From NCBI GenBank assembly GCA_051530055.1, contig CM121341.1, forward strand, positions 2,469,561 to 2,533,560: a stretch of DNA of 64,000 nt. The letters run 5' to 3'. The translations under genes were made by a program, and so were the position numbers. Shown piece by piece: positions 1,473 to 54,824 of the stretch. The notes beneath the pieces are model-generated. The model was given only the letters and a program-made list of their open reading frames with translations. It searched no databases and was not told the origin of the DNA. Source of the stretch: Neoechinorhynchus agilis (lineage: Eukaryota > Animalia > Acanthocephala). The first letter of the stretch is position 1. Each line of letters begins with the position of its first letter.

Positions 1473-1772
<300 letters not shown>

Positions 1773-1967: not shown

Positions 1968-4900
1968 ATGCTTGTTGTCCTTCATTCGGCGAAAGGAAAC
2001 TTCTTCCGGCTGTCCGTCATTCACGTGAAAGAAGTCGCAGCCACAGACCTATTCGAAGTCCCACAAGACGGACACACGGTAAGGATTAAGAGAAGCTCAT
2101 CTAACTTTATCCTCCTACAGTGCTTGGTAGTAGCCCAACTGTTCAAGCTAAAACAACTTTCTAAGGTCGAGCTTTCTGCAGGGGGCCTAGTTACAGCATT
2201 AGGCGTGTCTATGGATACATATGACGCTTTGACTACGAAAGAGGCGAGAATAGATCTGATCATCCGGACCCTTTTAAAGCGGGCTCAATCCGCCATGATT
2301 TCTAGAATGCTCGACGTTATCGAATCTGTTGCAGGACCTAAATTAGTCACTCCCGTTGCGAAACAAGTGGAAGACAAAGATTCATCTTTATCATCAGTCA
2401 CTCGATCTATCTTATGGAAAACCCCGAGCCGGCTCTCTGAAGTTCAAGGAGAATTGTCGCGAACGGTCTACACAGATTTATTAGGTAATGACAATTCTGC
2501 GAATGCACGAGCTAGATTTCGAGATAGAGCTGTTAAAATCCTTGATGACAGAAAGGCCCATTTTGTTGGTCTTAAGAAGAAACCTCGAGACACCGTGTTG
2601 AATCGAGCCTTAGAAGATTTGCGGGTTGCTCAAAATGGTATTGATGGCAGTCTGGCTATAATAGACGGGGTTATGGAGGAGATCCAAGCTACCGCTAATC
2701 TCGATGATCTTCCCATAATGAACGTCTATCGTGATGACCTAGACCTTGAATCGCTCGTGAATTGCCCGGTTGACCTCGGAACTGCGTTTATGGCCTATAT
2801 GTCCAGGGCCAAAGCTACTGTTGGGCAAGCAGAGATGGTGAGAGTTGTCAAGAAAGGGCGCTATAATAATGTCACATCTTTCGTTCCTACCGATAAGACC
2901 GGGTCTTTTACCCGTGATATGGAATCCGCTATCCGCAATATCAAATACAACGATGCTTTCGTCGGTCCGACCACTATAAACGAGAAATCGTCAGACATCG
3001 ATCATAAAATTCGTAATGATGTTAGGGTGCGAGCGCATTATTTACTGAATAAGATCGGAGTGTCCAAAAAAAGGTTGATGGGACTGTGTTACGCTCATCG
3101 TTCAAACTTACCTCTAACTTCTCGCAATCAGAATCTTTGTGCAGCTTTCTGTAGAGAGCTTGAACTATTGGATGGTCAAGGGAAGCTACTAGAAAAGGCC
3201 GAGTGGCGCGTATCTAGAAGGTTGGCTCTCCTTTCCTTTCTCCGGAACAGACACTTCAGACGATTCTGTTCTTCAAGCTGGATTTCGGCGGACGCTGTCC
3301 GTACCTTAGTAAGAAACGGTGTGAGCTCGTTTGTGAGTTCTTATATCTCCATCGTTCTGGCTGGGAGTGACGGTTATGCTGAACGCCTTTCCGAGGAGTG
3401 GAATGGTCTTATGCATGCTATTAACGGCAACCCGATGTCTGTACCCTACATTCCTACAGGGTATCAAATGACCGTTGAGCATGTCCACTATACTAATACC
3501 ACTCTTAAGATGACGACTGTCTTGGCTGGGAACTATTCCCTCTTCCGAACTCTGCCACTCGCTAGAGTGATTATCTTGACATCTGGACTTCCGGTTATCT
3601 TACATGATTATGGGTTACAGCGTATGGAAAATGGCGATTTTCTCACCGAGGATATGCGGACGATGGCTGCTGCTGCAAAGTGTGCCTTTTTTGGTGATGG
3701 TGAGACCAAAGATATTCAATATTATGCCGGAACCACAGTCAATCTCGCCGATATGCATGCACCCCTCTGGCTGGCTGGCGGCTTTTCTTATTGCACCTCT
3801 GGTGTCATCGGCCCCGGAGCTAATGATGATTGGCGTCAGATCTCCATCTCTGTGCGTCCTGGAACCGATTCACGACCGGAATCCCTACATATCTTTGCAG
3901 GAGAGCGCCCAGCAGCGCCAGTTGTTATCAAAACCAAGACATGTTGGGATCGAGTCTTTCACTTTATTCTCTCTGATGATATAGGCGTCAATTTTCGGAT
4001 GGACTTTACTCGGGTCCTAAATACAGTAAGTCATCTAAGTCCTATGCTTGGGATCCGTACGTTGTGTGGTTCAGTCTCGTTAGACCACTATAGGGATGGC
4101 TCTCCAGCAACATTTGCCAGGCTTAGAGCGTTGCTCTCTTTCGATAAGAATCCAGAAGTCACTAGCCCCCCACCAAATGGCGAGACGAATTTGATGGGCA
4201 CGATTAGGCGGATGTGGTCGTCACAGCCTTTCGAAGTGATATGGATCCGCATGTCAGTAGTTGAATATCTGAATTCTATTGCAGTCAACAATATCTCGTG
4301 GTTGGAAGGGGACAATATGCACAATTGGGCATACGACGGGAGAGTTTTGGCACTCGTGGAGCAGTATTTTCCTATTCCGCATGAGCAGCTGTTCCGTTTG
4401 GTAGCCACCGTCTGGAATCCCACACTCATTGACGAGATTTATATGAATGATTCCGGTGGAAGTTTCAACCACTTCGTCTTAATGGACTCTTTCGCTAAAA
4501 CACCTGATAAGGAATTCATGGTTATTACCGTCACTCTCGAGGAGATAGCTGTTCAGGTGCGACGTTTCACCTACGACCATTCAAACGGTATGGGCGGCTT
4601 TCCTTATGACGGAATGGGTTTATCTATTCTTAACGGCTCTCCCACGAATGAGTCTTTCGACCAGATCCCTCTCCAGGAAGAGCTTTTATCTTATATGGCG
4701 TTATCCGGTAACACATTACATCATCAGGTGATGGGTAGGTTAAATGTGCCCTACTCGTCCGGCGTTCGCCTGTTCTGGCATTATGACCCAGGCTTCTATT
4801 TCTATCCTCTTGTTCAACTTGGAATGCTTAGGGTTGAAGATCTTCCTGCTGCCCGTGATAGATGCGGGCCTCAGGATGAGTTAATTTATTACTCTCCTCC

Positions 4901-5768
4901 GAATGTCCTGCCAAGACTAAGATGTTTCCTTCATAAACTCAGCGTGAGGCTCGATACAATGCAAGTTTCTGTTAAAACTGCCACGCCGGAAGCCTCGTGG
5001 GTTCTAGGCACGGTTAGTGATACCGCATTTAAAAATACCAGAACTATTATTGGCGCCATCAGTGCATTTATGGGACCTCCGTTAGCATATGCTTTTGCTG
5101 TCTGGGCAGATGATCCTGCCGTTACTATTTCTAACGAGAGGACCACTTTACACTGGTGTTTGGTATCGAAACACATTGGAATTTCTATCGGCTCTGGAAT
5201 TACTACATATTCTGAAAGTTATGGGAGGGTTTCTTTGGGCGTGCCTTATATGCAGGCTGCTCAGACTACGAACGACGAACTCAGTACAAAATTCTTCTTC
5301 AATAATGCTGTCTGGTCCATTGTAGTCACGGACTCTTTAAAGTTGTTTAGGGTCGGGCCGATCACCCCTCTTACACGAGAAATGATGCCTTTGATCACTT
5401 TGAAAGGCTTCGTCGCGGGTGTTCGTTCGGATATCACACTTCCAGGCGTTCTACTCCCGAGGTCGTGTAGAGGTCAGTTCGATGTCATAACAATCGACTC
5501 TTTGTTCGCTATGCACATTAAGCTTAACCCTTATGTTCGCCTGTTATTTACCCTTGCTAACAACGCCAGCTGCGAAACGCGTTACGATAAGGGTACGTTT
5601 GACGTCAAAAGAGAAGAGAAATATGCTGACCCTTTTGGTATAGCGAGATGTTTCGAGGGGGACTCTCCGCTAGCACCCATAGCCCCGGGACGTCGAGTCT
5701 CTACCAAGCGTCAGATTCAAAAGGCTACTTCAGATTTAGTGGATGTGTCTGCAGAGGAGCAGAATTGA
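1968..5768 (+). CDS. Intact 1266-aa ORF1 of the toti-like EVE; putative major capsid/structural polyprotein
   Basis: Uninterrupted 3.8-kb intronless ORF in the ORF1 position, upstream of a slippery site and the RdRp. The capsid call is positional; no fold motif was recognised by eye. Confidence 0.65.
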   Translation: MLVVLHSAKGNFFRLSVIHVKEVAATDLFEVPQDGHTVRIKRSSSNFILLQCLVVAQLFKLKQLSKVELSAGGLVTALGVSMDTYDALTTKEARIDLIIRTLLKRAQSAMISRMLDVIESVAGPKLVTPVAKQVEDKDSSLSSVTRSILWKTPSRLSEVQGELSRTVYTDLLGNDNSANARARFRDRAVKILDDRKAHFVGLKKKPRDTVLNRALEDLRVAQNGIDGSLAIIDGVMEEIQATANLDDLPIMNVYRDDLDLESLVNCPVDLGTAFMAYMSRAKATVGQAEMVRVVKKGRYNNVTSFVPTDKTGSFTRDMESAIRNIKYNDAFVGPTTINEKSSDIDHKIRNDVRVRAHYLLNKIGVSKKRLMGLCYAHRSNLPLTSRNQNLCAAFCRELELLDGQGKLLEKAEWRVSRRLALLSFLRNRHFRRFCSSSWISADAVRTLVRNGVSSFVSSYISIVLAGSDGYAERLSEEWNGLMHAINGNPMSVPYIPTGYQMTVEHVHYTNTTLKMTTVLAGNYSLFRTLPLARVIILTSGLPVILHDYGLQRMENGDFLTEDMRTMAAAAKCAFFGDGETKDIQYYAGTTVNLADMHAPLWLAGGFSYCTSGVIGPGANDDWRQISISVRPGTDSRPESLHIFAGERPAAPVVIKTKTCWDRVFHFILSDDIGVNFRMDFTRVLNTVSHLSPMLGIRTLCGSVSLDHYRDGSPATFARLRALLSFDKNPEVTSPPPNGETNLMGTIRRMWSSQPFEVIWIRMSVVEYLNSIAVNNISWLEGDNMHNWAYDGRVLALVEQYFPIPHEQLFRLVATVWNPTLIDEIYMNDSGGSFNHFVLMDSFAKTPDKEFMVITVTLEEIAVQVRRFTYDHSNGMGGFPYDGMGLSILNGSPTNESFDQIPLQEELLSYMALSGNTLHHQVMGRLNVPYSSGVRLFWHYDPGFYFYPLVQLGMLRVEDLPAARDRCGPQDELIYYSPPNVLPRLRCFLHKLSVRLDTMQVSVKTATPEASWVLGTVSDTAFKNTRTIIGAISAFMGPPLAYAFAVWADDPAVTISNERTTLHWCLVSKHIGISIGSGITTYSESYGRVSLGVPYMQAAQTTNDELSTKFFFNNAVWSIVVTDSLKLFRVGPITPLTREMMPLITLKGFVAGVRSDITLPGVLLPRSCRGQFDVITIDSLFAMHIKLNPYVRLLFTLANNASCETRYDKGTFDVKREEKYADPFGIARCFEGDSPLAPIAPGRRVSTKRQIQKATSDLVDVSAEEQN
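5630..5686 (+). promoter_or_regulatory. Candidate -1 programmed ribosomal frameshift signal: C CCU UUU heptamer plus downstream stem/pseudoknot
   Basis: CCCTTTT at 5630-5636 is phased X XXY YYZ in ORF1 (GAC CCT TTT). The -1 frame opens right after a TGA at 5627-5629 and runs to 5863. Stem TAGCG-AGA (5641-5648) pairs with TCT-C-CGCTA (5664-5672). Loop GGGG (5657-5661) can pair with CCCC (5683-5686). Confidence 0.65.
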
Positions 5769-5868
5769 GAGCTTCCACTTATCCAAGTGAAAATCTTCAC
5801 GAGAATCTTCGAATGATCACAAGGTTCATGCCAACAGATGTTAAAATTATAATAAATAACTAAAAAAC

Positions 5869-8800
5869 GGTTAGGTCGCACCAACTCTTGTCTAGGCGGC
5901 GGCGATGGTTTAATATGGGACAGGCTAAATCTATTATATGCTTCTGATTTAATCATTAATACGTACTCTAGCCCTGTTAAACATCCCGGTGTCGACATCT
6001 AGCGTGAAATGTTAGTCAGCCGCACTTGGTCCACCTCTGGAGCCGCGAATTCCGGACATTATTCTTCGACAGAGAAAATCCTTCGGGTTAGTCAAAGCGA
6101 AAGAGTGGCTAGGGCGCACCAACTCTTGTCTAGGCGGCGGCGATGGTTTAATATGGGACAGGCTAAATCTATTATATGCTTCTGATTTAATCATTAATAC
6201 GTACTCTAGCCTTGTTAAACATCCCGGTGTCGACATCTAGCGTGAAATGTTAGTCAGCCGCACTTGGTCCACCTCTGGAGCCGCGAATTCCGGACATTAT
6301 TCTTCGACAGAGAAAATCCTTCGGGTTAGTCAAAGCGAAAGAGTGGCTAGGGCGCACCAACTCTTGTCTAGGCGGCGGCGATGGTTTAATATGGGACAGG
6401 CTAAATCTTATTATATGCTCCTGATCTAATCATCAATACGTACTCTAGCCTTGTTAAACATCCCGGTGTCGACATCTAGCATGAAATGTTAGTCAGCCGC
6501 ACTTGGTCCACCTCTGGAGCCGCGAATTCCGGACATTATTCTTCGACAGAGAAAATCCTTCGGGTTAGTCAAAGCGAAAGAGTGGCTAGGGCGCACCAAC
6601 TCTTGTCTAGGCGGCGGCGATGGTTTAATATGGGACAGGCTAAATCTATTATATGCTTCTGATTTAATCATTAATACGTACTCTAGCCTTGTTAAACATC
6701 CCGGTGTCGACATCTAGCATGAAATGTTAGTCAGCCGCACTTGGCCCACCTCTGGAGCCGCGAATTCCGGACATTATTCTTCGACAGAGAAAATCCTTCG
6801 GGTTAGTCAAAGCGAAAGAGTGGCTAGGGCGCACCAACTCTTGTCTAGGCGGCGGCGATGGTTTAATATGGGACAGGCTAAATCTATTACATGCTCCTGA
6901 TCTAATCATTAATACGTACTCGGCCTTGTTAAACATCCCGGTGTCGACATCTAGCGTGAAATGTTAGTCAGCCGCACTTGGTCCACCTCTGGAGCCGCGA
7001 ATTCCGGACATTATTCTTCGACAGAGAAAATCCTTCGGGTTAGTCAAAGCGAAAGAGTGGCTAGGGCGCACCAACTCTTGTCTAGGCGGCGGCGATGGTT
7101 TAATATGGGACAGGCTAAATCTATTATATGCTTCTGATTTAATCATTAATACGTACTCTAGCCTTGTTAAACATCCGGTGTCGACATCTAGCGTGAAATG
7201 TTAGTCAGCCGCACTTGGTCCACCTCTGGAGCCACGAATTCCGGACATTATTCTACGACAGAGAAAATCCTTCGGGTTAGTCAAAGCGAAAGAGTGGCTA
7301 GGGCGCACCAACTCTTGTCTAGGCGGCGGCGATGGTTTAATATGGGACAGGCTAAATCTATTATATGCTCCTGATCTAATCATTAATACGTACTCTAGCC
7401 TTGTTAAACATCCCGGTGTCGACATCTAGCGTGAAATGTTATCAGGCTCTACTTGGTCCACCTCTGGAGCCGCGAATTCCGGACATTATTCTTCGACAGA
7501 GAAAATCCTTCGGGTTAGTCAAAGCGAAAGAGGCCAGGGCGCACCAACTCTTGTCTAGGCGGCGGCGATGGTTTAATATGGGACAGGCTAAATCTATTAT
7601 ATGCTCCTGATCTAATCATCAATACGTACTCTAGCCTTGTTAAACATCCCGGTGTCGACATCTAGCGTGAAATGTTAGTCAGCCGCACTTGGCCCACCTC
7701 TGGAGCCGCGAATTCCGGACATTATTCTTCGACAGAGAAATTCCTTCGGGTTAGTCAAAGCGAAAGAGTGGCTAGGGCGCACCAACTCTTGTCTAGGCGG
7801 CGGCGATGGTTTAATATGGGACAGGCTAAATCTATTATATGCTCCTGATCTAATCATCAATACGTACTCTAGCCTTGTTAAACATCCCGGTGTCGACATC
7901 TAGCGTGAAATGTTAGTCAGCCGCACTTGGTCCACCTCTGGAGCCGCGAATTCCGGACATTATTCTTCGACAGAGAAAATCCTTCGGGTTAGTCAAAGCG
8001 AAAGAGTGGCTAGGGCGCACCAACTCTTGTCTAGGCGGCGGCGATGGTTTAATATGGGACAGGCTAAATCTATTATATGCTTCTGATTTAATCATTAATA
8101 CGTACTCTAGCCTTGTTAAACATCCCGGTGTCGACATCTAGCGTGAAATGTTAGTCAGCCGCACTTGGTCCACCTCTGGAGCAGCGAATTCCGGACATTA
8201 TTCTACGACAGAGAAAATCCTTCGGGTTAGTCAAAGCGAAAGAGTGGCTAGGGCGCACCAACTCTTGTCTAGGCGGCGGCGATGGTTTAATATGGGACAG
8301 GCTAAATCTATTATATGCTCCTGATCTAATCATCAATACGTACTCTAGCCTTGTTAAACATCCCGGTGTCGACATCTAGCGTGAAATGTTAGTCAGCCGC
8401 ACTTGGTCCACCTCTGAGCCGCGAATTCCGGACATTATTCTTCGACAGAGAAAATCCTTCGGGTTAGTCAAAGCGAAAGAGTGGCTAGGGCGCACCAACC
8501 TTTGTCTAGGCGGCGGCGATGGTTTAATATGGGACAGGCTAAATCTATTATATGCTCCTGATCTAATCATCAATACGTACTCTAGCCTTGTTAAACATCC
8601 CGGTGTCGACATCTAGCGTGAAATGTTAGTCAGCCGCAATTTCTTCGCTTTTTGGTCCACACCTCTGGAGCCGCGAATTCAGGACATTATTCTTCGACAA
8701 GAAAATCCTTCGGGTTAGTCAAAGCGAAAGAGTGGCTAGGGCGCACCAACTCTTGTCTAGGCGGCGGCGATGGTTTAATATGGGACAGGCTAAATCTATT

Positions 8801-10359
8801 ATATGCTTCTGATTTAATCATTAATACGTACTCTAGCCTTGTTAGACATCCCGGTGTCGACTAGCGTGAAATGTTAGTCAGCCGCACTTGGTCCGTTCTT
8901 GGAGCCGCGAATTCCGGACATTATTCTTCGATGAGAAAATCCTTCGGGTTAGTCAAAGCGAAAGAGGGCTAGGCGCACCAACTCTTGTCTAGGCGGCGGC
9001 GATGGTTTAATATGGGACAGGCTAAATTCCATGCATGCTCCTGATCTAATCATTAATACGTACTCTAGCCTTGTTAAACATCCCGGTGTCGACATCTAGC
9101 GTGAAATGTTAGTCAGCCGCACTTGGTCCACCTCTGGAGCCGCTAAATTCCGGACATTATTCTTCGACAGAGAAAATCCTTCGGGTTAGTCAAAGCGAAA
9201 GAGTGGCTAGGGCGCACCAACTCTTGTCTAGGCGGCGGCGATGGCTTAATATGGGACAGGCTAAATCTATTATATGCTTCTGATTTAATCATTAATACGT
9301 ACTCTAGCCTTGTTAAACATCCCGGTGTCGACATCTAGCGTGAAATGTTAGTCAGCCGCACTTGGTCCACCTCTGGAGCAGCGAATTCCGGACACATTAT
9401 TCTTCGACAGAGAAAATCCTTCAAGTTAGTCAAAGCGAAAGAGTGGCTAGGGTGCACCAACTCTTATCTAGGCGGCGGCGATGGTGGTTTAATATGGGAC
9501 AGGCTAAATCTATTATATGCTCCTGATCTAATCATTAATACGTACTCTAGCCTTGTTAAACATCCCGGTGTCGACATCTAGCGTGAAATGTTAGTCAGCC
9601 GCACTTGGTCCACCTCTGGAGCCGCGAATTCCGGACATTATTCTTCGACAGAGAAAATCCTTCGGGTTAGTCAAAGCGAAAGAGTGGCTAGGGCGCACCA
9701 ACTCTTGTCTAGGCGGCGGCGATGGTTTAATATGGGACAGGCTAAATCTATTATATGCTCCTGATCTAATCATCAATACGTACTCTAGCCTTGTTAAACA
9801 TCCCGGTGTCGACATCTAGCGTGAAATGTTAGTCAGCCGCACTTGGTCCACCTCTGGAGCCGCGAATTCCGGACATTATTCTTCGACAGAGAAAATCCTT
9901 CGGGTTAGTCAAAGCGAAAGAGTGGCTAGGGCGCACCAACTCTTGTCTAGGCGGCGGCGATGGTTTAATATGGGACAGGCTAAATCTATTATATGCTTCT
10001 GATTTAATCATTAATACGTACTTTAGCCTTGTTAAACATCCCGGTGTCGACATCTAGCGTGAAATGTTAGTCAGCCGCACTTGGTCCACCTCTGAGCCGC
10101 GAATTCCGGACATTATTCTTCGACAGAGAAAATCCTTCGGGTTAGTCAAAGCGAAAGAGTGGCTAGGGCGCACCAACTCTTGTCTAGGCGGCGGCGATGG
10201 TTTAATATGGGACAGGCTAAATCTATTATATGCTTCTGATCTAATCATTAATACGTACTCTAGCCTTGTTAAACATCCCGGTGTCGACATCTAGCGTGAA
10301 ATGTTAGTCAGCCGCACTTGGTCCACCTCTGGAGCCGCGAATTCCGGACATTATTCTTC
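5869..10359 (+). repeat. Tandem array of a 238-bp unit (18 full copies plus one 5'-partial copy) derived from the viral RdRp N-terminal coding region
   Basis: The GTCGAC site occurs 19 times at ~238-bp spacing. One frame reads KEWLGRTNSCLGGGDGLIWDRL...GVDI*REMLVSRTWSTSGAANSGHYSS. The last copy continues in frame into unique RdRp sequence (RSSQLGFKLPKTKSSLSLW). Confidence 0.95.
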
Positions 10360-11897
10360 TAGATCTAGTCAGTTGGGCTTTAAGTTACCCAAGACAAAAT
10401 CGTCTCTATCTTTGTGGGCCACAGATCAAGATATTTATGATATGATCACTCGTACCGAAATATGAAGAGTTGGGTAAAACGAGGCACATTCTAAGATCCG
10501 ATGATTCAACTTATCTGAAACAGGTTTTCGTTGAGAAGTGTCTCGGCTTGCCTTCTGCGCCCATTATCGACAATATCAAAGTGGTCTCTCCGATCTTCTG
10601 TGATCCTCACGATTGGCTCCTTCAACTTAGGGAATTTGGTTCTACAGTGAGCAACCGGGACCGATATTCCGTGCAATTAGACCACTCTAAATTTGATGAG
10701 CATCAGTCTGGACCTCTGATTAGGTGTATTATGGTGCAACTTCTCTCACACGCTAACAAGAGGTATCCGGCCATTCTGACACCTCTAAAAGATAGCTTAT
10801 TGAGCACGTTTCTCACTCGTGCGAGTGTGGAACTTGCCGCTGGCGGTCACGTCTGTTTTCATTTGGGAGGTCTTCCTTCTGGCTGGAAATGGACAGCTCT
10901 AATAGATACCGTGTTAAACTATTCCTTGAATAGGGCTGCGATTGATATTGTAGGCCTGCCTTTGCAACCCAGTATCATGGCTCATATGGGTGACGATTCT
11001 CTCTGGTTCGTTAAAACTGACAACTTAACAACTGCTATTCAGGTTCGGTCTTTTCTAAACTGGAAGGGGTATACTCTTAACGCTTCCAAGAATTATATAT
11101 CTAATGTGTCGAGCGACTTTTTAGGCTACACTTCCACCTCTGCTCTCAGTATTCGAGGAGCGCCCTCTTGGATGATACCGACCATCGTAACTTCGCATTC
11201 GCGTATAGGTTACGAGATCCCGCCCGTGTTGCGCGCTTTTTCAGCACTGTGGAATTGGGTTATGGTTATCAAGAGGCTTGAGGGGATTGTAGCTAAGAAA
11301 GTAATGATACCGCTGCTTTTAAAGGATGTCTCAGGAATTTCCAAACGATCGACTATCGATGTCATTCATTACCTTAATACTCCGATTTCACTCGGGGTAG
11401 CCGGATTGACCGGACTATCAACTTACCTTGGATTTGAGAGCGCTAACAAAGCCATCACTCTATTGCGCGAGCCTGAATATTACGATCTGTCAAAGTTGAT
11501 TACCAAAACCACTCCTTTATCTCTTTGCTTACCTCGAATACATGCCAAACTATTCGAAACAGCGATGAATCAATATTGTGAAAGAACACTCTCCACGCGC
11601 AAGGCAGCCAATTTGTATTTTCAGCGCGTCGGCAGTGTTAAAATCAGGCGCAGCAAGTGCCCTAGTATATCGCAGTTGTTACCTGCACGCTGGAGTTTGT
11701 GTTGGTCGAGGGCAATAGAATCTACATTGAAAGAGTTAACAACTAGATCTAGATCGGTGTTTCGCCTCTTGTCATTCCGAACTAAGACACTGTATGTGCT
11801 TTTTAACAAGAGGAGACATTCATGGGCCTTGATTAGATCTTGGCTCCTTGGGCGTTTGCCTACCGTACGTAAATTCGTGTTTATCCACCGAGCTTAA
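10360..11897 (+). pseudogene. Toti-like virus RNA-dependent RNA polymerase: core intact, N-terminus disrupted
   Basis: KTKSSLSL, then a frameshift near 10446-10465, then KYEELGKTRHI...D..YLK (motif F), LDHSKFDEHQ (A), GGLPSGWKWTALIDTVLN (B), HMGDD (C), DFLGY (E) and C-terminal WLLGRLP. Confidence 0.9.
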
Positions 11898-13530
11898 CGA
11901 TATCTACCATTTTCTGGCTGACGCTAGTGACAATTTCCTTACCACAGTCAGGATATCCGCAGGAATACCTCGGAAACCCAATCTATTATCCCTTTACGGC
12001 AAGGAGCTCTTCAAAGCTAAGGCAGCGGGCGACACCAGTTCCTCTAAGTTTTGGTCATCTCTCTACTGGCCGTGCAAAGCCAGATTCCAGATCGCTCAAG
12101 ATCGCAAAATGATCAGCTCTTACCTACCCCACTCATCGGAATGGTGGAGAGTAGTAAACCGGAAGCGCTCCTTCCCATGGAAAAGGGCAGCTGCCGCCTG
12201 GATCAGAGCTTTAGGCTTTGACACAGTCATCAGTGCACTTTGCTCCGAACACTCCAACGGTGCCAGTCCGATTCCCATCGCCACTAGCTTCATACTTCCT
12301 AAACCACGGAGACTTGATCTCACCAAAAAAGATTTTTTGCAATGGTGGACCTCTAACAATCTTACCTCATGCAACGGCTCTTCAGCTTGTTTCAAAGCAA
12401 CCAACGTCTTGAGTAGGGATAACATTTCATTATTGGCCAGTGTCATGCTATTAGCCTCACCTGAAGAATGGTCCGAAATTAATATTGCGAAAAGGATTTT
12501 CCTACGCAAAGGTAAGGTTCGATCAATATCTTCTCCGGGAGATGTGAGACCAATTTCCATTCAAAACTCGCTGGTCTCCATCTATAAGAGAATCCTTGCC
12601 GGGTGGATCGTCGCCTTTTCCTGTGAGCATAATCTCATCGATAAGCGCTGCCATGGCTTCGTTCCCGGCCAATCAGTTCATTCAGCTATGAATGAAATTT
12701 TACATAATTTTGGTCAGAACCGTCGATCTATGAATATCTTGATTTTATTTGATATCAGCAAGGCATTTGACAATATCGATATTGATTTTATCATGATTGT
12801 TATGCGGTATTTTAATTTTCCTTTTAACTTCATAGCTAGGGTTCACAATACTTTGAGGTCTAAGCGGTTCTTTTTCTCGGATAACCTCCGCTGGCTCGAT
12901 CTGCTTGGCCTCTCAATACATAGTTCGAAACTGCACAGTTTGTCCGGTTGACCTGACTGCGATAATTAAGGAGCGTAACTATGTGCAAGCTCGAGCGAAA
13001 CTTGCTGCAGTACTAAAAATTGTAAAAGAAAAACTACCTCACATGGGTCTTGCCTTGAATAAAAAGAAGAATAAGTTATTAATAAAATTGAGATCTGCCT
13101 TGGTAAGCGACACATTAGAGAGTTCGTCAATGAGTTTTTAACCCTTGACTTTTTCCCAGTATACCACAGACTCTACATTCTAGGCTATACCCTCACTAGC
13201 AATTTATCAGTCTTGGCCGACATGAATACGATGAAACGCCTACTGAAAATTGCCAATGCCAAGGAAAAGCGTGCTGCCCGACTAGGCCTCAATGCAGATC
13301 TATTTGGAACTCTTGGGCTATATCTGGTCTAGTCTTCTATTCTAGAGGACGGGCGCCCGAACAACGCCAGAGCTTTCGCTGCACATTCCTGAGACTCAGT
13401 TCTGTTCTCCCCTTCGCATGGGCCAACTGCGTTGACTGGACCACCAAAGTGGACAAATGAACAGCGATCGCCAATGAATGATACGTTCGATTTATTCAAA
13501 CTATCTCACATGGTCCTTCTGCGAATAAAT
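11898..13530 (+). mobile_element. Non-LTR retrotransposon ORF2 linker plus degenerate reverse transcriptase (3' half of the split LINE)
   Basis: EWWRVVNRK linker, RKGK...DVRPISIQNSLVSIYKRILA, HGFVPGQS, LFDISKAFDNID. The PQG domain is missing and YADD is degraded (CPVDLTA). GLALNKKK and YILGYTL occur in shifted frames. AATAAA near 13523. Confidence 0.85.
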
Positions 13531-17132: not shown

Positions 17133-17909
17133 TTAAATGCTTTCTTTATATCCAAAATCGGATTCGCTCTCAACAGTGCTGTCGTAATCGGAGATACCGT
17201 CAGTACTACTTCTCTTTGAAACGTTCTGAATAGAATTTAGGACAATTCCGTCCACTCGATTAATCCAAGAATCAAACTCTTCCGATTCGGATAACTGTTC
17301 GTAAATTACATTCGCCGAGACGTTTTGAGGAAATCCCTTTTTCAATGAACTACCTTGTCTAGTTTCGCTTCGTTTAATCGCAGATCGATTTTGTGAAGAA
17401 TCACGACCGTAGCGTGGACCAGGCGATTGGCGAATATCGTTCTCGCCGTTGAACTGTTGGTTCTCACGATTTACTGACTTCTTTCGATCAGGCTTCGAAC
17501 CATCGCTTTTCCTATTAGATTCTCTCACATCTTTATCAAGAATCCGTCTTGGACCGTCGCTTTTCCTATTAGATTCTCTCACTTCTTTATCAGGAATCCG
17601 TCTTGGACCATCGCTTTTCCTATTAGATTCTCTTACCTCTTTATCAGGAATCCGTCTTGGACCATCGCGTTTCCTATTAGATTCTCTTACCTCTTTATCA
17701 GGAATCCGTCTTGGACCATGGCTTTTTCGTTCGGATTCTCGTACATTACTGTTCTGTTCTTTTGAGTTTGAGAAAAGAAACTCCTTAATGGCATTCTGTT
17801 CAGCATCGCGAAATGCAATCGGCAGAAGATGAATGTCTCCAATATACATTGGAACAAGGCGATCAAAGAAACGTACACCACAGCGCTTCAAGAGACAATT
17901 CTCGTTCAT
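17133..17909 (-). CDS. 258-aa charged protein or exon with 18-aa tandem repeats
   Basis: About 4.5 copies of KSDGPRRIPDKEVRESNR, a 54-bp unit at ~17495-17740. Confidence 0.55.
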   Translation of the reverse strand: MNENCLLKRCGVRFFDRLVPMYIGDIHLLPIAFRDAEQNAIKEFLFSNSKEQNSNVRESERKSHGPRRIPDKEVRESNRKRDGPRRIPDKEVRESNRKSDGPRRIPDKEVRESNRKSDGPRRILDKDVRESNRKSDGSKPDRKKSVNRENQQFNGENDIRQSPGPRYGRDSSQNRSAIKRSETRQGSSLKKGFPQNVSANVIYEQLSESEEFDSWINRVDGIVLNSIQNVSKRSSTDGISDYDSTVESESDFGYKESI

Positions 17910-21919: not shown

Positions 21920-22009
21920 AAAATAAATCGTACTGCTATTTAGATTTTATACTCTATTTTTTGATTTCGCTCGAATTGAAAAAAGGTCAGTAAACCAAGA
22001 CGCTTAAAA

Positions 22010-24000
22010 TAAAACACGTTTTATTAATTAAGAAGAACGATCCATAAACTTGCCAGCATCAATCCCTGCTGAAGGTGTCTGGATGTCGAATGTTGAGGCA
22101 GGGAGGTGCGACTTGTCTTTGAAGGAGTTTTACAGGAGAATGACAGATTAGGAGTCTTTCTTTGTTCTTTGGTTATTAAGGAAAGATTGGGCTTGAGGGA
22201 AGAAAGATTTTTGGTAGAGGGTGGTACGAGCGAGGGGGGGGATGAAAAAGGTTGGGGTTCCGGGTGTTTACTAAGGACGAGTATTTAGAGATGAGGGAAG
22301 AAAATTGTGGAGGGGGTTGAAGAAGACGGAGGGCGTTTTTGGAGAAAATGGAGTGGAGGTGGGCGTCGAGGGGAGGGAGTGAAGTCCCGCATATTTTAGC
22401 TGCTCTCTTGTGGAAGGTTTCGAGGGAATGGAGAGCATTGGCGGAATGGGCGAGGAAAGTGGGGAAAGCGTATGTAAGGATAGGAAGGATGTCAGAGAGA
22501 TAAAAGTGGGCAAGGTGTTTAAGGGAAACGCCGAGACGCCGGAGGAGTTTGAGAAGGTAAAGACGAGGGTTTGCTTTAGAGAGCGTAAATGAAATGCGGG
22601 CATTCCATTTAAGGTTTTCTTGTGAAATCTGGCAAAGTATCCGGAGAAAAGAGGAGCGTTGGATGGGGAGTGGGGCGGGGATAAGATTGCGTTTGGGAAT
22701 GTGGGGGACAAGCTCAAAAGATTTGGATAAATTTAGGGAGAGGTTTAGGGTGGAGGGCGAGGAAATGAGATGGTTGAGCTCGTTCATGGTAGTGGAGAGG
22801 GAGAGAGAGGGAGATGCGATGGTAATGACTGTGAGGTCATCGGCATAGAGAAAATATTTCGTAGGGGTAGTGAGGGGATGAAGGTCATTTAGAAAAATGT
22901 CAAAGAGGAGAGGGGAAAGTACGGCGCCTTGGGGGACCCCTTTAAATATGGGTAGAGAGGTGGAACAAGAAGTTCCACATTGGATATATTGTTCGCGGTT
23001 GGAGAGGAAAGAGGAAATCCAAGCGAGTTGCCAAGTTGGGAGGCCAAAGGAAGCATATGATTGGAGGAGAATGGAGTGATCTACCGACTCAAACGCCCTG
23101 GAAATATCCAGTTGCACGAGACGGACGGTTGATTCTGGATTGGAATCTAAGCTGCGCACAAGGGTATCGTAGATGCAGAGGAGGGCATCAGAACAAGAGT
23201 AATTTGGACGGAAAGCGAATTGGGAGGGGGAGATGTTTTTGAGGAAGAAGGGAAGTAGCCGGGTTTTAAAACATTTTTTTATGATTTTAAAGAAAGGTGA
23301 GAGGATAGAGATGGGACGAAACTATGTGGAGGAAATCCGTTTATTGTTTTTGGGTAGGGGACGACACGGGCTTCCTTAAGAAATAGAAAGCTAAGGTTCG
23401 TTATGTGCGTTAGAGGATCGATAAGTTCCGGGATGATGAAACGAATGGCCCAATTTGGAATAGTCGAATTAGTGGAAGAATGGCGGGGCAGGCGTTTGAG
23501 GATCTCTAGGATTTCGAGAGGGGAAACTAAGAAAGGGTATGTATGAATGGGCGGGTCCGAAAGTGAGAAGGGAGGTTGGGACAATGGAGAGGAGGTTTAA
23601 GGAGGACATAGGTTTTTATTCATGGTGTTGAGGATTGAGAGGAGATCAGATTTGGGGAGATATGCGAAGGGGTGGATCTGCCAAAACCAGTGACATTTTT
23701 TATTTCACACCACCAGTTTCGATTGGGAACGGACGAGAGGCGAGATGAGAAAAGTAATTTGCGGGCTATACGGATGCGTTTTGTCAGTGTGGAGTGGAGG
23801 GAGGGGTAAGCAGGATTACCTGACCGGAAAGCTTCGGTGACCTGTATTTGAAGGGTTTTTAGAAAAGGAGAGAACCATGGAGGGTCGCGGTTCGAGATTC
23901 GTATTGTTTTGCGAGGAAAGGAAGCCTTCATCGCACATTCTATTAGATTTGACAAAGAGCCCATTGCAATCGAGAGTCGGTGCATCAGATATGGGGAGAA
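22010..24000 (-). mobile_element. 5'-truncated, frameshifted APE-type LINE (CR1/L2-like) with reverse transcriptase
   Basis: VRLVQLDISRAFESVDH, GVPQGAVLSPLLF, YADDLT and PPWFSPFLK; 3' end AATAAAACGTGTT. Confidence 0.9.
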
Positions 24001-24004
24001 TAAA

Positions 24005-24400
24005 ATGTTTTATTGTTCAAAGTATATTTTAGAGTGTGGATGACGGTTCCGCTGAGTTGGGGGGGGAGCGTTTGTGAGATTGGGTCTTTCCTCACTCCCT
24101 CTCTAATGAACACTCGAACGATAGGATAGGTTAAATGAATGGGGCTGTTTATTTTGAAATTTATAATGACTCCGATCGAGTAGGCGAAAGTTGGTGGTTA
24201 TTTTCTCTTCTTAGGTCTTTTTCCTGAGGTTCATTTCGGTTCTTGATATCCTAGAAGAATGGGTAGTATGGGATAGAGGGATAATGGAAGGAATTGTGAT
24301 TACGAGCGTTGTGCTCCTGAGAAGTCGGGACATCTTTAGATTGTTTAGAGGCAGTTTAAAAGCTGTACGACTTCTATCCATCGGTGTGGTATTCAACGAG
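24005..24400 (-). mobile_element. Fragment of a second dispersed repeat (LINE 3'-end-like)
   Basis: 24125-24259 matches 47336-47470 in inverted orientation with one mismatch; the two copies also share a TACTTTGAACAATAAAA terminus. Confidence 0.55.
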
Positions 24401-25164: not shown

Positions 25165-27340
25165 AATCTTTTTAGAGAACGTTAACGACGATTTCTATTA
25201 TCTTATTTATGTCTCTGATGAAATTCATCAATAGAATTTCTTCAAAAAAGGATTTCCAAGCGTTTAGAGTTTACCCTTGGAATCATTAAAAAAATATTCA
25301 ATTTATGTCTTTAATGTAATTCATCAATAGAATTTTTAATTTCTTCTTAAAAAATCAATAATGTTTAAGAATTTACCCTTGGAATCATTAAAAAAACATT
25401 TAGCCTTTTAGAGACGATTTCTATTATCTAATTTGTGTCTTTAATGTAATTCGACAATAATTTAATTTCTTCTTAAAAAATCCATAAGTGTTCAGAATTT
25501 ACCCTTGGAATCATTAAAAAGACATTTAGCCTTTTAGAGACGATTTCTATTATCTAATTTATGTCTTTAATGTAATTCATCAATAGAATTTCTTCTAAAA
25601 AGGATTTCCAAGTGTTCAGAATTTACCCTTGGAATCATTTAAAGAACATTTAGCCTTTTAGAGACGATTTCTATAATCTAATTTGTGTCTTTAATTTAAT
25701 TCATCAATGGAATTTCTTCTAAAAAGGATTTCCAAGTGTTCAGAATTTACCCTTGGAATCATTAAAAAGACATTTAGCCTTTTAGGGACGATTTCTATTA
25801 TCCAATTTATGTCTTTAATTTAATTCATCAATAGAATTTCTTCTAAAAAGGATTTCCAAGTGTTCAGAATTTACCCTTGGAATCATTAAAAAGACATTTA
25901 GCCTTTTAGGGACGATTTCTATTATCCAATTTATGTCTTTAATTTAATTCATCAATAGAATTTCTTCTAAAAAGGATTTCCAAGTGTTCAGAATTTACCC
26001 TTGGAATCATTTAAAGAACATTTAGCCTTTTAGAGACGATTTCTATTATCTAATTTATGTCTTTAATTTAATTCATCAATAGAATTTCTTCTAAAAAGGA
26101 TTTCCAAGTGTTCAGAATTTACCCTTGGAATCATTAAAAAGACATTTAGCCTTTTAGGGACGATTTCTATTATCCAATTTATGTCTTTAATTTAATTCAT
26201 CAATAGAATTTCTTCTAAAAAGGATTTCCAAGTGTTCAGAATTTACCCTTGGAATCATTAAAAAGACATTTAGCCTTTTAGAGACGATTTCTATTATCTA
26301 ATTTATGTCTTTAATGTAATTCATCAATAGAATTTCTTCTAAAAAGGATTTCCAAGTGTTCAGAATTTACCCTTGGAATCATTAAAAAAACATTTAGCCT
26401 TTTAGAGACGATTTCTATAATCTAATTTGTGTCTTTAATTTAATTCATCAATGGAATTTCTTCTAAAAAGGATTTCTAAGTGTTCAGAATTTACCCTTGG
26501 AATCATTAAAAAGACATTTAGCCTTTTAGGGACGATTTCTATTATCCAATTTATGTCTTTAATTTAATTCATCAATAGAATTTCTTCTAAAAAGGATTTC
26601 CAAGTGTTCAGAATTTACCCTTGGAATCATTAAAAGAACATTTAGCCTTTTAGAGACGATTTCTATAATCTAATTTATGTCTTTAATGTAATTCATCAAT
26701 AGAATTTCTTCTAAAAAGGATTTCCAAGTGTTCAGAATTTACCCTTGGAATCATTAAAAAGACATTTAGCCTTTTAGAGACGATTTCTATTATCTAATTT
26801 ATGTCTTTAATGTAATTCATCAATAGAATTTCTTCTAAAAAGGATTTCCAAGTGTTCAGAATTTACCCTTGGAATCATTAAAAAGACATTTAGCCTTTTA
26901 GAGACGATTTCTATAATCTAATTTATGTCTTTAATGTAATTCATCAATGGAATTTCTTCTAAAAAGGATTTCCAAGTGTTCAGAATTTACCCTTGGAATC
27001 ATTAAAAAGACATTTAGCCTTTTAGAGACGATTTCTATTATCTAATTTATGTCTTTAATGTAATTCATCAATAGAATTTCTTCTAAAAAGGATTTCTAAG
27101 TGTTCAGAATTTACCCTTGGAATCATTAAAAAAACATTTAGCCTTTTAGAGACGATTTCTATTATCTAATTTGTGTCTTTAATGTAATTCATCAATGGAA
27201 TTTCTTCTAAAAAGGATTTCCAAGTGTTCAGAATTTACCCTTGGAATCATTTAAATAACATTTAGCCTTTTAGAGACGATTTCTATTATCTAATTTGTGT
27301 CTTTAATGTAATTCGTCTACATAATTTTTAATTTCTTCTA
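25165..27340. repeat. AT-rich 124-bp minisatellite, ~17-18 copies, degenerate at the left edge
   Basis: ACCCTTGG recurs every 124 bp from 25501 to 27237, with degenerate copies further left. Confidence 0.97.
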
Positions 27341-51628: not shown

Positions 51629-51996
51629 TCTCCTCCCCTCGACGCCCACCTCCACTCCATTTTCTCCAAAAACGCCCTCCGTCTTCTTCAACCCCCTCCA
51701 CAATTTACTTCCCTCATCTCTAAATACTCTTCCCTAGTAAACACCCGTAACCCAAAAATTTTTCATCCTCCCTCGCTCGTACCACCCTCGACCAAAAATC
51801 TTTCTTCCCTCAAGCCCAATCTTTCCTTAACAACCGGAGAACAAGGAAAGACTCCTAATCTGTCATTCTCCTGTAAAACTCCTTCAAAGGCAAATCCCAC
51901 CTCCCTGCCTCAACATTCGACATCCAGACACCTTCAGCAAAGATAGATGCTGGCAAGTGTATGGATCGTTCTTCTTAATTAATAAAACGTGTTTTA
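51629..51996 (+). mobile_element. Short 5'-truncated 3' end of the same LINE family as 22010-24000
   Basis: PLDAHLHSIFSKNALRLLQPPPQF; ends in AATAAAACGTGTTTTATT. Confidence 0.85.
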
Positions 51997-53358: not shown

Positions 53359-54824
53359 GTTTACAAATAATGGAAAAATTAATTTTTAAGGAACAGTGAC
53401 GAATGAGGCTGAACTTGATGAAAAGACCAAAGTTTGAAGGATAAAGCTATGAAGGTTTGAATTATACCGTTCCATAAAAATAAGTCTATAGATGATACCC
53501 ACAAGCACTAATGCACGTGACTGTTGATTAGACCTTAATGGCATTAAGAAATGCATTAAGGATATCTCTAATTAATGCACATTTCTGTCAAATCATTTTA
53601 AAATAGCATTAATCTTAATGCCAATTACGAATTATTCGCATGGTCACTTTGTCTATTTTGCCTAAAACACGGGATTTCCATTGCCTGTAATTGCCATGCT
53701 CGTTTACGTTTGAGGCTTAGAGCCCACGCTCCCACGGCTTCAATTCTTGCAATTGTTTCTCAAAAATTGTATCGTTTAAGGGATCTATTGAGTGGATCAG
53801 ACGTTATTCGGCTATTGCTAAAGCAAGTTTCTCTAAAGTTCCTATACGAACTCCAAATTTTCCCCACCAAATGACGAAGTAGATCAATGGCATCCTAAAG
53901 GTGTTCACAATGAAGATGCTGATTGACATGAGTTCAAACGGCACCAACATTTTTAATAACTATATTCACGCTGCGAATTTTCTATACAACTCTTAGATAT
54001 TAAAGAATTCGTCATTGCAACAAATTGATTTCACTAATTATGTCCGAAATCAACGTACATTTTTAAAAGTAGCAAAAAACGGAGTTCCCATTAATTTCTA
54101 GAAAAAATACTCACATTGAGACGCTCAGACGCCTTTTAGTCGGCACGAACGCACAACCATCCACTACAAAGTCGCTCAATTCAGCAAAGAATAAAACAGA
54201 ACGACAAGAAGAACACGAAAGCAGCCATAAAAAGCGGATGGCGATTTGGAAGGTACGAAAAAACCGAAGAATTCATGGTCCATGTAAAGATTTGGTGTGC
54301 GATTAAATTTTTTTAATCTATTTGTGAAAAATAGCCATGTAGTCTTTGTGCTCGATATCTTTTCGAATTAAAATCGAACTTACTCGCTTTCGAGAGTGTC
54401 GTGTGAGAAACTTACATTCGATTTTAAAGCCGCTTCGGTCGCTTAACTCAGTTCATTAATCGCAGCTTAATCGGAAATGAACAAAAAACGCTTTTTCCCA
54501 ATCGAATAGATCGATTGGAGCCGTAAACCGAAACGCTAAAAACCATTGAGTAATGATTCTACTTAACGCGGTGATTTTAACGATCCATCGCTAAAATGGT
54601 TTAAGGCCCATATTGTAATTTCGCCGGACTACGTTACATTCACCGACGGTATTACCAAATTCCTATTTGAACCTTTACGAGAGAAAAAACTCATGTTAAA
54701 CAGTCACTGCGATCTGAAGCTGTCCTTTTTTCGCATTGTCGGGCATCGAGCTCTTATAAAGATTCACTTGCCCTCGAAGCAAACATTGCTCTCTCGCTCC
54801 TTGGCTTCGAAAAAAGAAACTCGG

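What the first reader, a model, noticed from the sequence alone, without database searches (positions are those of the whole stretch)
5869..10359. Virus-derived satellite: a 238-bp piece of the RdRp gene amplified 19 times in place
Seen: the unit encodes the LGR... and WSTSGA region that precedes RdRp motif F, and the last copy reads straight into unique RdRp sequence. An in-frame TAG is shared by the copies, so it predates amplification. The unit length (3n+1) destroys the frame. Inference: a conserved viral polymerase segment has been turned into a tandem array, which could act as a dose-amplified source of antiviral piRNA/siRNA or as a silencing seed for the locus. It could also have arisen by rolling-circle or repeated RT jumping on a viral RNA during capture. 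I do not know of a described equivalent.
Basis: partly seen in the sequence, partly recalled or inferred. Interest (0 to 1): 0.9.

Follow-up and report, generated by a model that had tools for sequence, protein, structure and literature searches.

The report
Tandem array inside a viral fossil
A 238-base piece of a virus polymerase gene, long ago integrated into the chromosome of the fish-parasitic worm Neoechinorhynchus agilis, has been copied head-to-tail about 19 times, most likely by the same host process that litters this small genome with similar arrays, so it is a real curiosity whose proposed immune role is untested.

Summary
Window 5872-10359 is a 238-bp tandem array of 18.8 copies, 91-100% alike. 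The unit is a piece of a toti-like RNA-virus polymerase (RdRp) gene, and the last copy runs colinearly into unique RdRp sequence. All 19 copies share one in-frame stop, and the unit length (3n+1) breaks the frame.

The host is the acanthocephalan Neoechinorhynchus agilis. The array lies in an endogenous viral element (EVE): an intact 1266-codon ORF1, then the array, then the catalytic part of the RdRp, then a LINE-like reverse-transcriptase fragment. About 270 N-terminal RdRp codons are missing.

Three results point to ordinary stepwise DNA-level amplification after integration:
- Two unit variants mostly alternate, giving a 475-bp higher-order period.
- The same segment is single-copy in a paralogous EVE.
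- Non-viral arrays of 54-454-bp units fill about 10% of the 218 kb examined, roughly one per 18 kb.

The antiviral small-RNA role is untested. The host does have PIWI proteins and ping-pong piRNAs, and public small-RNA libraries exist. Copy number rests on a hybrid nanopore assembly.

I found no described array built from a sub-genic piece of an RNA-virus EVE. Analogues exist, namely retrotransposon-derived satellites and tandem endogenous geminiviral arrays. Verdict: a new variant of a known kind, of moderate interest.

The parts
1968..11897 (+). Endogenous viral element (EVE) derived from a toti-like dsRNA virus: ORF1, a short spacer, then the RdRp remnant that contains the array. Homology to paralogous copies starts near ORF1 residue 22.
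   Evidence: The ORF1-then-RdRp order recurs in paralogous loci of the same genome. The RdRp part hits Pfam RdRP_4 and exogenous toti-like polymerases. It lies on the 19.4-Mb chromosome-scale record CM121341.1 of N. agilis, with no gaps and flanked by host genes.
1968..5768 (+). ORF1: an intact 1266-codon reading frame of unknown function, presumed to be the upstream (capsid-side) ORF of the virus. It is annotated as hypothetical protein ACOME3_000485.
   Evidence: ORF listing. No Pfam or PDB match. Seven paralogs at 44-59% identity, all from N. agilis, and no outside homolog. The AlphaFold model was unusable, with mean pLDDT 28.8.
5769..5868 (+). Spacer of about 100 nt between the ORF1 stop and the array. 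It ends in AATAAA plus an A-rich run. Only its first part resembles the post-ORF1 region of the paralogs.
   Evidence: Sequence read; alignment with L003 and L009.
5869..10359 (+). The tandem array: 238-bp unit, one 5'-truncated copy (about 43 nt missing) plus 18 full copies. Two unit types mostly alternate, giving a 475-bp higher-order period.
5869..11897 (+). RdRp gene remnant, given as one part because the gene is broken. The breaks are: loss of about 270 N-terminal codons (one deletion); the 19-fold amplification of a 3n+1 unit; one in-frame stop present in every copy; further frame-changing length differences in 10 of 18 full copies; and one frameshift 3' of the array. A 475-codon stretch with no stop follows, and it keeps the G-D-D motif.
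   Evidence: The N-terminal part is absent from the whole window.
10668..11186 (+). The stretch matching Pfam RdRP_4 (profile positions 299-460 of 465), that is, the catalytic palm region.
   Evidence: E 2.1e-10; 35% identity to the 'Molussus totiviridae 1' RdRp; 31% to the Schistocephalus solidus toti-like virus 3 polymerase.
11848..12951 (+). Fragment of a non-LTR (LINE-like) retroelement ORF on the same strand. It abuts the 3' end of the RdRp homology. Only the first half of the RT domain is present.
   Evidence: Pfam RVT_1, profile positions 6-99 of 205. Weak match to the R2 retrotransposon protein 9nl2. Related fragments occur in locus L008. No RdRp homology.

Best explanation
**Integration (inferred).** A toti-like dsRNA virus was copied into DNA and integrated into the germline of Neoechinorhynchus agilis. 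Its nearest named relative is a tapeworm toti-like virus. The copying was probably done by a retroelement reverse transcriptase that switched templates. This step is inferred from the same-strand LINE-like fragment fused to the 3' end of the element.

**Amplification (shown in part).** In the integrated copy, whose polymerase gene was already broken, a 238-bp segment of the RdRp gene was duplicated in tandem. It then expanded in several rounds by replication slippage or unequal exchange, some of them at the level of two-unit blocks.
- The multi-step nature is shown.
- The enzymatic route is inferred.

**Host process.** The same process has produced many non-viral arrays with similar unit sizes and similar copy identity in this genome.

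**Missing 5' part.** Either a further deletion or an original rearrangement of the cDNA removed about 0.8 kb of the RdRp 5' part and the first 43 nt or so of the first unit.

**Consequence.** The array is most likely selectively neutral. Any small RNAs it yields would be a by-product of its being a repeat in an animal with a piRNA pathway.
For: 1. Two unit types, defined by shared variants, mostly alternate (A B A B A B ...), and TRF also finds a 475-bp period. Shared variants in a periodic pattern need duplication after mutation, so amplification was multi-step in DNA and not a single burst.
2. All 19 copies share one in-frame stop. The founder was most simply already non-coding.
3. The homologous segment is single-copy in the paralogous EVE, at 67% nucleotide identity over 207 nt.
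4. The 3' end of the array is colinear with the rest of the gene.
5. Tandem arrays are common here.
   - Eleven non-viral arrays were found: units of 54-454 bp, 4-19 copies, 89-100% matches.
   - All twelve arrays, this one included, fill 10.6% of the 218 kb examined. The non-viral ones occur about once per 17.7 kb of non-array sequence.
   - Three lie elsewhere in this window.
   - Unit sizes cluster at 115-135 and 208-239 bp, and 238 falls in the second cluster.
   - With at least 8 toti-like EVE loci in the genome, about one array arising inside EVE sequence is expected by chance.
6. The unit RNA has no unusual fold on either strand, with z-scores of +0.55 and +0.92.
7. The window is gene-rich (PP2C, Kazal, HEAT-repeat genes). 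It is not an obvious transposon graveyard.
Against: - The 5' flank is not colinear. The array abuts a spacer after ORF1 and the first unit is truncated. An extra deletion or a rearranged cDNA must therefore be assumed.
- ORF1 (3.8 kb) and the 475-codon RdRp stretch have no stops or frameshifts. The array shows 14 indel events and 44 private substitutions in 4.5 kb. At the array's indel rate, about 12 indels would be expected in ORF1. Either the flanking ORFs are constrained, so the locus is not simply decaying, or the array mutates faster or carries assembly noise.
- Private changes pile up in three mid-array units. The assembly is a nanopore/Illumina hybrid from pooled worms, with gap closing by long reads (PMC12690905).
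- No read-level, expression or small-RNA evidence was available.
Confidence: 0.6

Rival explanations
1. The array is a selected, dose-amplified template for antiviral small RNAs. Transcripts of 19 copies of a conserved polymerase segment would feed the PIWI/ping-pong pathway and target a cognate toti-like virus.
For: - N. agilis is reported to have PIWI orthologues, piRNAs with a ping-pong signature and clustered piRNA loci (PMC12256650).
- EVE-derived piRNAs limit a cognate virus in Aedes (PMC7522710).
- Satellite repeats inside a mosquito piRNA cluster have been proposed to amplify piRNA output (PMC7919454).
- Tandem endogenous geminiviral arrays in yam carry abundant siRNAs (PMC5014472).
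- The unit covers residues that are invariant among related RdRps.
- The flanking viral ORFs are unexpectedly intact.
Against: - There are no small-RNA or expression data for the locus.
- Non-viral arrays of the same kind are abundant, so amplification needs no selection.
- The other toti-like EVE copies examined (8 loci) have no virus-derived array.
- The locus sits among ordinary genes.
- No cognate exogenous virus of this host is known. The nearest relatives are only 31-35% identical in protein, too far for small-RNA targeting.
Confidence: 0.13
2. The repeats were made at the RNA/cDNA stage. The possible routes are repeated backward template jumps or rolling-circle copying by the capturing reverse transcriptase, or a defective viral RNA that already carried duplications. 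The array would then have been integrated ready-made.
For: - A LINE-like RT fragment is fused on the same strand to the EVE 3' end.
- Paralogous copies show internal joins, for example ORF1 joined directly to the RdRp N-terminal part in L004. These suggest template switching during capture.
- The missing 0.8 kb 5' of the array could be another jump.
Against: - Eighteen jumps at identical points are improbable.
- A single burst would give identical units with only private changes. Here shared variants alternate as a higher-order repeat.
- A stop common to all copies argues against a replicating template.
- The host genome makes such arrays from non-viral DNA.
- A first duplication at capture, followed by DNA-level expansion, cannot be excluded.
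Confidence: 0.1
3. The array exists, but its length and internal variants are partly an assembly product: mis-estimated copy number, pooled haplotypes, or an unpolished long read used for gap closing.
For: - The assembly is a MaSuRCA hybrid of R9.4 nanopore reads from a pool of about 50 worms plus Illumina reads. Gaps were closed with TGS-GapCloser (PMC12690905).
- Private changes and odd unit lengths concentrate in units 11-13, mid-array.
- None of five array ORFs tried is present as an exact sequence in the 15-billion-protein collection.
Against: - The structured, alternating shared variants and clean colinear edges are not what collapse or expansion errors produce.
- There are no gaps in the window.
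- Reads of at least 5 kb were used, long enough to span 4.5 kb.
- Other arrays of similar size are assembled in the same way.
Confidence: 0.12

Closest known systems
Satellite or tandem repeats born from internal parts of LTR retrotransposons (for example in Lathyrus; Vondrak et al. 2020, PMC7004042)
   Same: A short internal piece of an integrated element is amplified head-to-tail in place. The arrays are short to medium in length, and the parent element is still recognisable around them.
   Different: Here the source is a coding fragment of a non-retroviral dsRNA-virus EVE, whereas there it is a retrotransposon (often a non-coding region). Only one locus is seen here, and there is no sign of spread or high genomic abundance.
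Tandem endogenous geminiviral sequences (yam EGV1; Nicotiana geminivirus-related DNA; PMC5014472)
   Same: Virus-derived DNA sits as a tandem array in a host chromosome. For yam, the authors suggested that the tandem repeats help maintain a small-RNA silencing response.
   Different: Those units are about genome length (2.6 kb) and come from a rolling-circle ssDNA virus, so the tandem form can stem from the replicative form. Here the unit is a 238-bp sub-genic piece of an RNA-virus gene, amplified stepwise in host DNA.
Non-retroviral EVEs as piRNA templates in mosquitoes (PMC7522710) and satellite repeats inside a conserved mosquito piRNA cluster (PMC7919454)
   Same: The host here has the pathway (PMC12256650).
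   Different: Nothing here shows small RNAs from the locus. In mosquitoes the EVE and the satellite are separate things, and I found no described case that combines them.
Toti-like viruses of parasitic worms (Schistocephalus solidus toti-like virus 3; PMC7305300) and toti-like EVEs in invertebrate genomes
   Same: The polymerase remnant is 31-35% identical to these RdRps, with conserved motifs and the same ORF1-then-RdRp order.
   Different: This copy is chromosomal, lacks the RdRp N-terminal part and is interrupted by the array. ORF1 has no detectable homolog outside N. agilis.

Membership tests
Non-retroviral endogenous viral element (toti-like, Pfam RdRP_4 group) | Protein-level homology to an exogenous RNA-virus gene | tested here: met
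   Pfam RdRP_4, E 2.1e-10. HMMER hits to named toti-like polymerases, E 1e-39 to 1.6e-53. The G-D-D motif and other invariant columns are kept.
Non-retroviral endogenous viral element (toti-like, Pfam RdRP_4 group) | Embedded in host chromosomal DNA next to host genes | tested here: met
   The sequence lies on a 19.4-Mb record of N. agilis. Kazal, PP2C and HEAT-repeat genes are in the same gap-free window. Integration was not verified at the level of raw reads.
Non-retroviral endogenous viral element (toti-like, Pfam RdRP_4 group) | Incomplete or disrupted relative to the viral genome | tested here: met
   The RdRp N-terminal part (about 270 codons) is absent. The array, a stop shared by all copies and one frameshift break the gene.
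Satellite DNA in the classical sense | Head-to-tail monomers with concerted evolution or higher-order structure | tested here: met
   18.8 copies at 95% matches, with alternating A and B unit types and a 475-bp period.
Satellite DNA in the classical sense | High genomic abundance, with long arrays or many loci | tested here: inconclusive
   Only one 4.5-kb array was seen. The unit is absent from the rest of the window and from about 150 kb of other loci, except for a single-copy homolog. The whole genome could not be scanned with these tools.
piRNA cluster or EVE-derived small-RNA source | Dense 26-32-nt small RNAs with 1U bias and ping-pong overlap mapping to the locus | not testable with these tools
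   No read data could be reached. Two N. agilis small-RNA libraries exist under PRJNA1127840 (PMC12256650).
piRNA cluster or EVE-derived small-RNA source | Host has a PIWI/piRNA pathway | not tested
   Taken from the literature only. PIWI orthologues and ping-pong piRNAs are reported for N. agilis, along with absence of a cellular RdRP, Dnmt1 and Dnmt3 (PMC12256650).
piRNA cluster or EVE-derived small-RNA source | Location in a region dense in transposon or virus fragments | tested here: inconclusive
   A few RT fragments are present (11848-12951, 22176-23159, about 51.6 kb and about 54.8 kb). Most of the window is ordinary genes.
Element-derived tandem repeat (retroelement- or virus-derived array) | The unit is homologous to an internal part of an integrated element, and the parent element flanks the array | tested here: met
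   The 3' flank is colinear with the gene. The 5' flank is ORF1 of the same element, although about 0.8 kb is missing between them.

The most novel reading that the evidence does not exclude
The array is a selected 'amplifier'. Under this reading, a conserved polymerase segment of an integrated RNA virus was multiplied 19-fold because this raises the output of antiviral piRNAs in a parasitic worm. The intact neighbouring ORF1 and catalytic RdRp stretch would be retained as part of the same co-opted locus. This would be the first case of an EVE sub-fragment turned into a repeat-based small-RNA generator, and the first antiviral EVE function outside arthropods and vertebrates.
Probability: 0.12. 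Interest if true: 0.75.

Novelty: new variant of a known kind. Interest (0 to 1): 0.4.

Why it matters
**If the neutral reading is right.**
- The locus is a clean, datable snapshot of how a tandem array is born from unique sequence. The parent gene still flanks the array, and an unamplified paralog serves as a control.
- It documents toti-like EVEs at 8 or more loci in an acanthocephalan with a very small (46-Mb) genome. One of these loci has an intact 1266-codon ORF.

**If the functional reading is right.**
- It would extend EVE-based small-RNA immunity to Syndermata.
- It would show that copy amplification can tune such immunity.

**Testability.** The question can be tested directly with existing public data: small-RNA, mRNA and long-read libraries of the same species.

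Tried and rejected
**Searches that returned nothing useful**
- Pfam on the unit peptide alone and on the last 422 residues of ORF1: no hit. The RdRp identity of the unit had to come from a paralog and a profile.
- PDB sequence searches with ORF1 and with a profile of its paralogs: nothing.
- AlphaFold2 on ORF1 residues 201-1266 with 8 paralogs: mean pLDDT 28.8, unusable, so no fold search was run.
- tblastn of a distant RdRp (P0002) and of the paralog's RdRp N-terminal ORF against the window: the N-terminal part is simply absent.
- Exact look-up of five array ORFs in the protein collection: none present.
- The last homology search, with the paralog's RdRp N-terminal ORF: only its own annotated protein came back.
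- Look-ups of contigs encoding P0002 and P0012: not on record.
- Search of the genome paper's supplement for RdRp annotation or expression: nothing.

**Ideas tested and rejected**
- The 121-bp array that abuts a truncated ORF1 copy in L009 might also be virus-derived: no homology.
- The 239-bp array in L002 might be the same repeat family: no similarity.
- The unit might be a structured RNA: z-scores of +0.55 and +0.92.
- The ORF at 11848-12951 might hold the missing RdRp C-terminus: no, it is a retroelement fragment.

**Not attempted**
- dN/dS between ORF1 paralogs, because 64-65% nucleotide identity means saturated synonymous sites.
Full report
**1. The observation**

Tandem Repeats Finder reports a single array at window 5872-10359. 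It has period 238, 18.8 copies, 95% matches, 1% indels and score 8249, and fits a 475-bp period equally well.

Cutting the array at a conserved anchor gives one 5'-truncated copy and 18 full copies of 233-252 nt. Full copies are 90-100% identical to one another. The first copy joins the register about 43 nt into the unit. Upstream of that point the sequence is unrelated.

The window has no N runs. The feature is real in the assembly and far beyond chance.

**2. Where the window comes from**

The proteins encoded on either side of the array are on record from Neoechinorhynchus agilis, an acanthocephalan (thorny-headed worm). The assembly is GCA_051530055.1 and the record is CM121341.1, 19.4 Mb long.

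- The rest of the window carries ordinary host genes: two PP2C phosphatases, a Kazal inhibitor and a HEAT-repeat protein. It also holds a few reverse-transcriptase fragments.
- The published genome is 46.2 Mb. It was assembled with MaSuRCA from R9.4 nanopore reads (5 kb or longer, from a pool of about 50 worms) plus Illumina reads. It was scaffolded with Hi-C and gap-closed with long reads (PMC12690905).

**3. What the unit is**

The long open stretch 3' of the array (475 codons) matches Pfam RdRP_4 at profile positions 299-460 (E 2.1e-10).

- An exhaustive HMMER search finds 245 relatives.
- The best named ones are the Schistocephalus solidus toti-like virus 3 polymerase, 'Molussus totiviridae 1' RdRp and Triaenono virus 1, at 31-35% identity.
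- The alignment to the Molussus RdRp keeps the G-D-D motif.

The peptide read from the last unit into unique sequence gets no Pfam hit on its own. Two other comparisons identify it:

- It aligns at 62% identity over 74 residues (E 4e-30) with an RdRp N-terminal ORF next to a paralogous ORF1 on another contig of the same genome (L003). That ORF aligns with exogenous RdRps (E 3e-12 pairwise; hhalign E 3e-20).
- Against a profile of six exogenous RdRps, the unit-plus-junction peptide scores 96% probability (E 1.7e-9) at profile columns 238-337. This lies immediately before the region matched by the open stretch.

Several columns that are invariant among the six relatives fall inside the unit. The next invariant cluster falls just 3' of the array in unique sequence. 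Calling that cluster motif F rests on general knowledge of RdRps and was not tested by a tool here.

The unit is a polymerase fragment, the last copy reads straight on into the gene, 238 = 3n+1, and all 19 copies carry one stop at the same columns.

**4. Anatomy of the element**

From 5' to 3' the element consists of:

- ORF1, 1968-5768: 1266 codons, intact, with no Pfam or PDB match.
- A spacer of about 100 nt ending in AATAAA and an A-rich run.
- The array.
- The rest of the RdRp, ending at 11897.
- A LINE-like retroelement fragment at 11848-12951, directly abutting on the same strand. It matches RVT_1 positions 6-99 of 205 and weakly matches an R2 protein.

Counted breaks in the RdRp gene are:

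- one loss of about 270 N-terminal codons, which are absent from the whole window;
- the amplification itself;
- one stop common to all copies;
- frame-changing length differences in 10 of 18 full copies;
- one frameshift 3' of the array.

ORF1 has seven paralogs at 44-59% identity, all from N. agilis and none from elsewhere.

- I fetched eight further loci.
- In those that keep any RdRp sequence, ORF1 is followed by the RdRp N-terminal part, which supports ORF1 and RdRp being one viral genome.
- Only the window keeps the catalytic part.
- The same-strand LINE fragment, and internal joins in the paralogs such as ORF1 joined directly to the RdRp N-terminal part in L004, fit capture by a template-switching retroelement RT. 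That is an inference.

**5. How the array arose**

*Alternating variants.* Nine alignment columns carry variants shared by two or more units. They define two unit types that mostly alternate along the array, which explains the 475-bp period. A periodic pattern of shared variants requires duplication after mutation, partly in two-unit blocks. This is the signature of stepwise unequal exchange or slippage in DNA. It is not what a single burst of RT jumps or rolling-circle copying would leave.

*Shared stop.* The stop present in all copies, in both unit types, most simply means the founder was already non-coding. Homogenisation within the array could also have spread it.

*Unamplified control.* At nucleotide level the unit matches only one other place in the material examined. 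That place is the homologous, single-copy stretch of the paralogous EVE, at 67% identity over 207 nt.

*Base rate.* Tandem arrays are a general habit of this genome.

- In 218 kb of non-redundant sequence there are 11 other arrays. Their units are 54-454 bp, with 4-19 copies and 89-100% matches.
- All 12 arrays together make up 10.6% of the sequence.
- Non-viral arrays occur about once per 17.7 kb of non-array sequence.
- Examples are 124 bp x16 and 208 bp x5 in this window, 135 x19, 129 x19 and 454 x10.5 elsewhere, and one with a 239-bp unit.
- None of them is virus-derived.
- Given 8 or more toti-like EVE loci, about one array inside EVE sequence is expected without any selection. These loci are not a random sample of the genome, so the estimate is rough.

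*Structure.* The unit RNA has no unusual structure on either strand.

**6. What does not fit neatly**

- The 5' side is not colinear, so a deletion or an already rearranged cDNA is needed.
- The array has 44 private substitutions and 14 indel events in 4.5 kb, yet ORF1 and the 475-codon stretch are unbroken. At the array's indel rate, about 12 indels would be expected in ORF1. Either the flanking ORFs are constrained, or the array mutates faster, or part of its variation is assembly noise.
- The last option is plausible. Private changes concentrate in three mid-array units, and the assembly used nanopore reads and long-read gap closing.
- I could not distinguish these possibilities.

**7. Function**

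No sequence feature argues for or against small-RNA production.

- From the literature, N. agilis has PIWI orthologues, piRNAs with a ping-pong signature and clustered piRNA loci. It lacks a cellular RdRP, Dnmt1 and Dnmt3 (PMC12256650). A piRNA role is therefore possible, while a DNA-methylation route is unlikely.
- Precedents exist for the separate halves of the idea: EVE-derived piRNAs that restrict a virus (PMC7522710), satellite repeats thought to boost piRNA output (PMC7919454), and tandem endogenous geminiviral arrays rich in siRNAs (PMC5014472).
- The nearest known exogenous relatives are only 31-35% identical in protein, so no present-day target is known.

**8. Comparison and novelty**

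The array works like the element-derived tandem repeats known from retrotransposons (PMC7004042). It resembles the tandem endogenous geminiviral arrays in being viral. It differs in its source (a coding fragment of a dsRNA-virus EVE), its unit (238 bp, sub-genic) and its stepwise growth in host DNA.

- It is not a classical satellite as far as tested, since only one locus was seen.
- Literature searches found no described RNA-virus equivalent.
- EVEs of another virus order have been noted in a different acanthocephalan (PMC12548735).

**9. Verdict**

- The best explanation is neutral, host-driven, post-integration amplification inside an EVE (confidence 0.6).
- A selected small-RNA role remains open at about 0.12 and is cheaply testable with public libraries.
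- Interest is 0.4: a new variant of a known kind.

Noticed in passing
window 22000-24400: A 2.4-kb stretch has extreme GC skew (+0.4 to +0.66; the plus strand is G-rich and C-poor). It overlaps a minus-strand reverse-transcriptase ORF at 22176-23159. Related RT fragments lie at 51632-51830 and 54812-55329 and in loci L004-L006. The cause of the strand asymmetry is unexplained.
   Followed up: partly
L004 10001-16539 (CM121341.1, about 9.67 Mb): A truncated toti-like ORF1 copy is joined directly to an RdRp N-terminal piece. Within about 750 nt there follows a called gene with Noda_Vmethyltr and RdRP_3 hits. Two unrelated RNA-virus EVEs therefore sit side by side.
   Followed up: partly
L002-L009 (eight loci of GCA_051530055.1): In most paralogs, ORF1 homology starts near residue 22. 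It ends at residue 352, 444, 722, 812, 891, 1247 or 1264. This is largely a nested series of 3' truncations with a common 5' end, the opposite of the usual LINE-type 5' truncation.
   Followed up: no
window 1968-5768: ORF1 is an unbroken 1266-codon frame with no homolog outside this species. A paralog on contig JBMGUZ010000012.1 is also intact at about 1290 codons. This could reflect recent integration or co-option.
   Followed up: partly
L009 8942-10150: A non-viral 121-bp x10 array ends 5 nt before a 5'-truncated ORF1 copy. An array therefore forms the boundary of another EVE fragment.
   Followed up: yes
window 17499-17726, 25300-27314, 32749-33765; loci L002, L006, L007, L008, L009: Tandem arrays make up about 10% of the 218 kb examined. 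Unit sizes cluster at 115-135 bp and 208-239 bp, with one of 454 bp, which hints at a preferred duplication length in this compact genome.
   Followed up: partly
window 5850-5868: An AATAAA followed by an A-rich run lies directly 5' of the array, about 85 nt after the ORF1 stop. It could be chance, or a remnant of a polyadenylated ORF1 copy.
   Followed up: no
window 1473-1755: A (TAT)n microsatellite of about 95 copies lies just upstream of ORF1.
   Followed up: no
L002 and L003 (both ends of JBMGUZ010000012.1): The 59-kb contig carries the same ORF1-plus-RdRp-N EVE in inverted orientation at both ends, with identical ORF1 protein. This is either a large inverted duplication or an assembly effect.
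   Followed up: no
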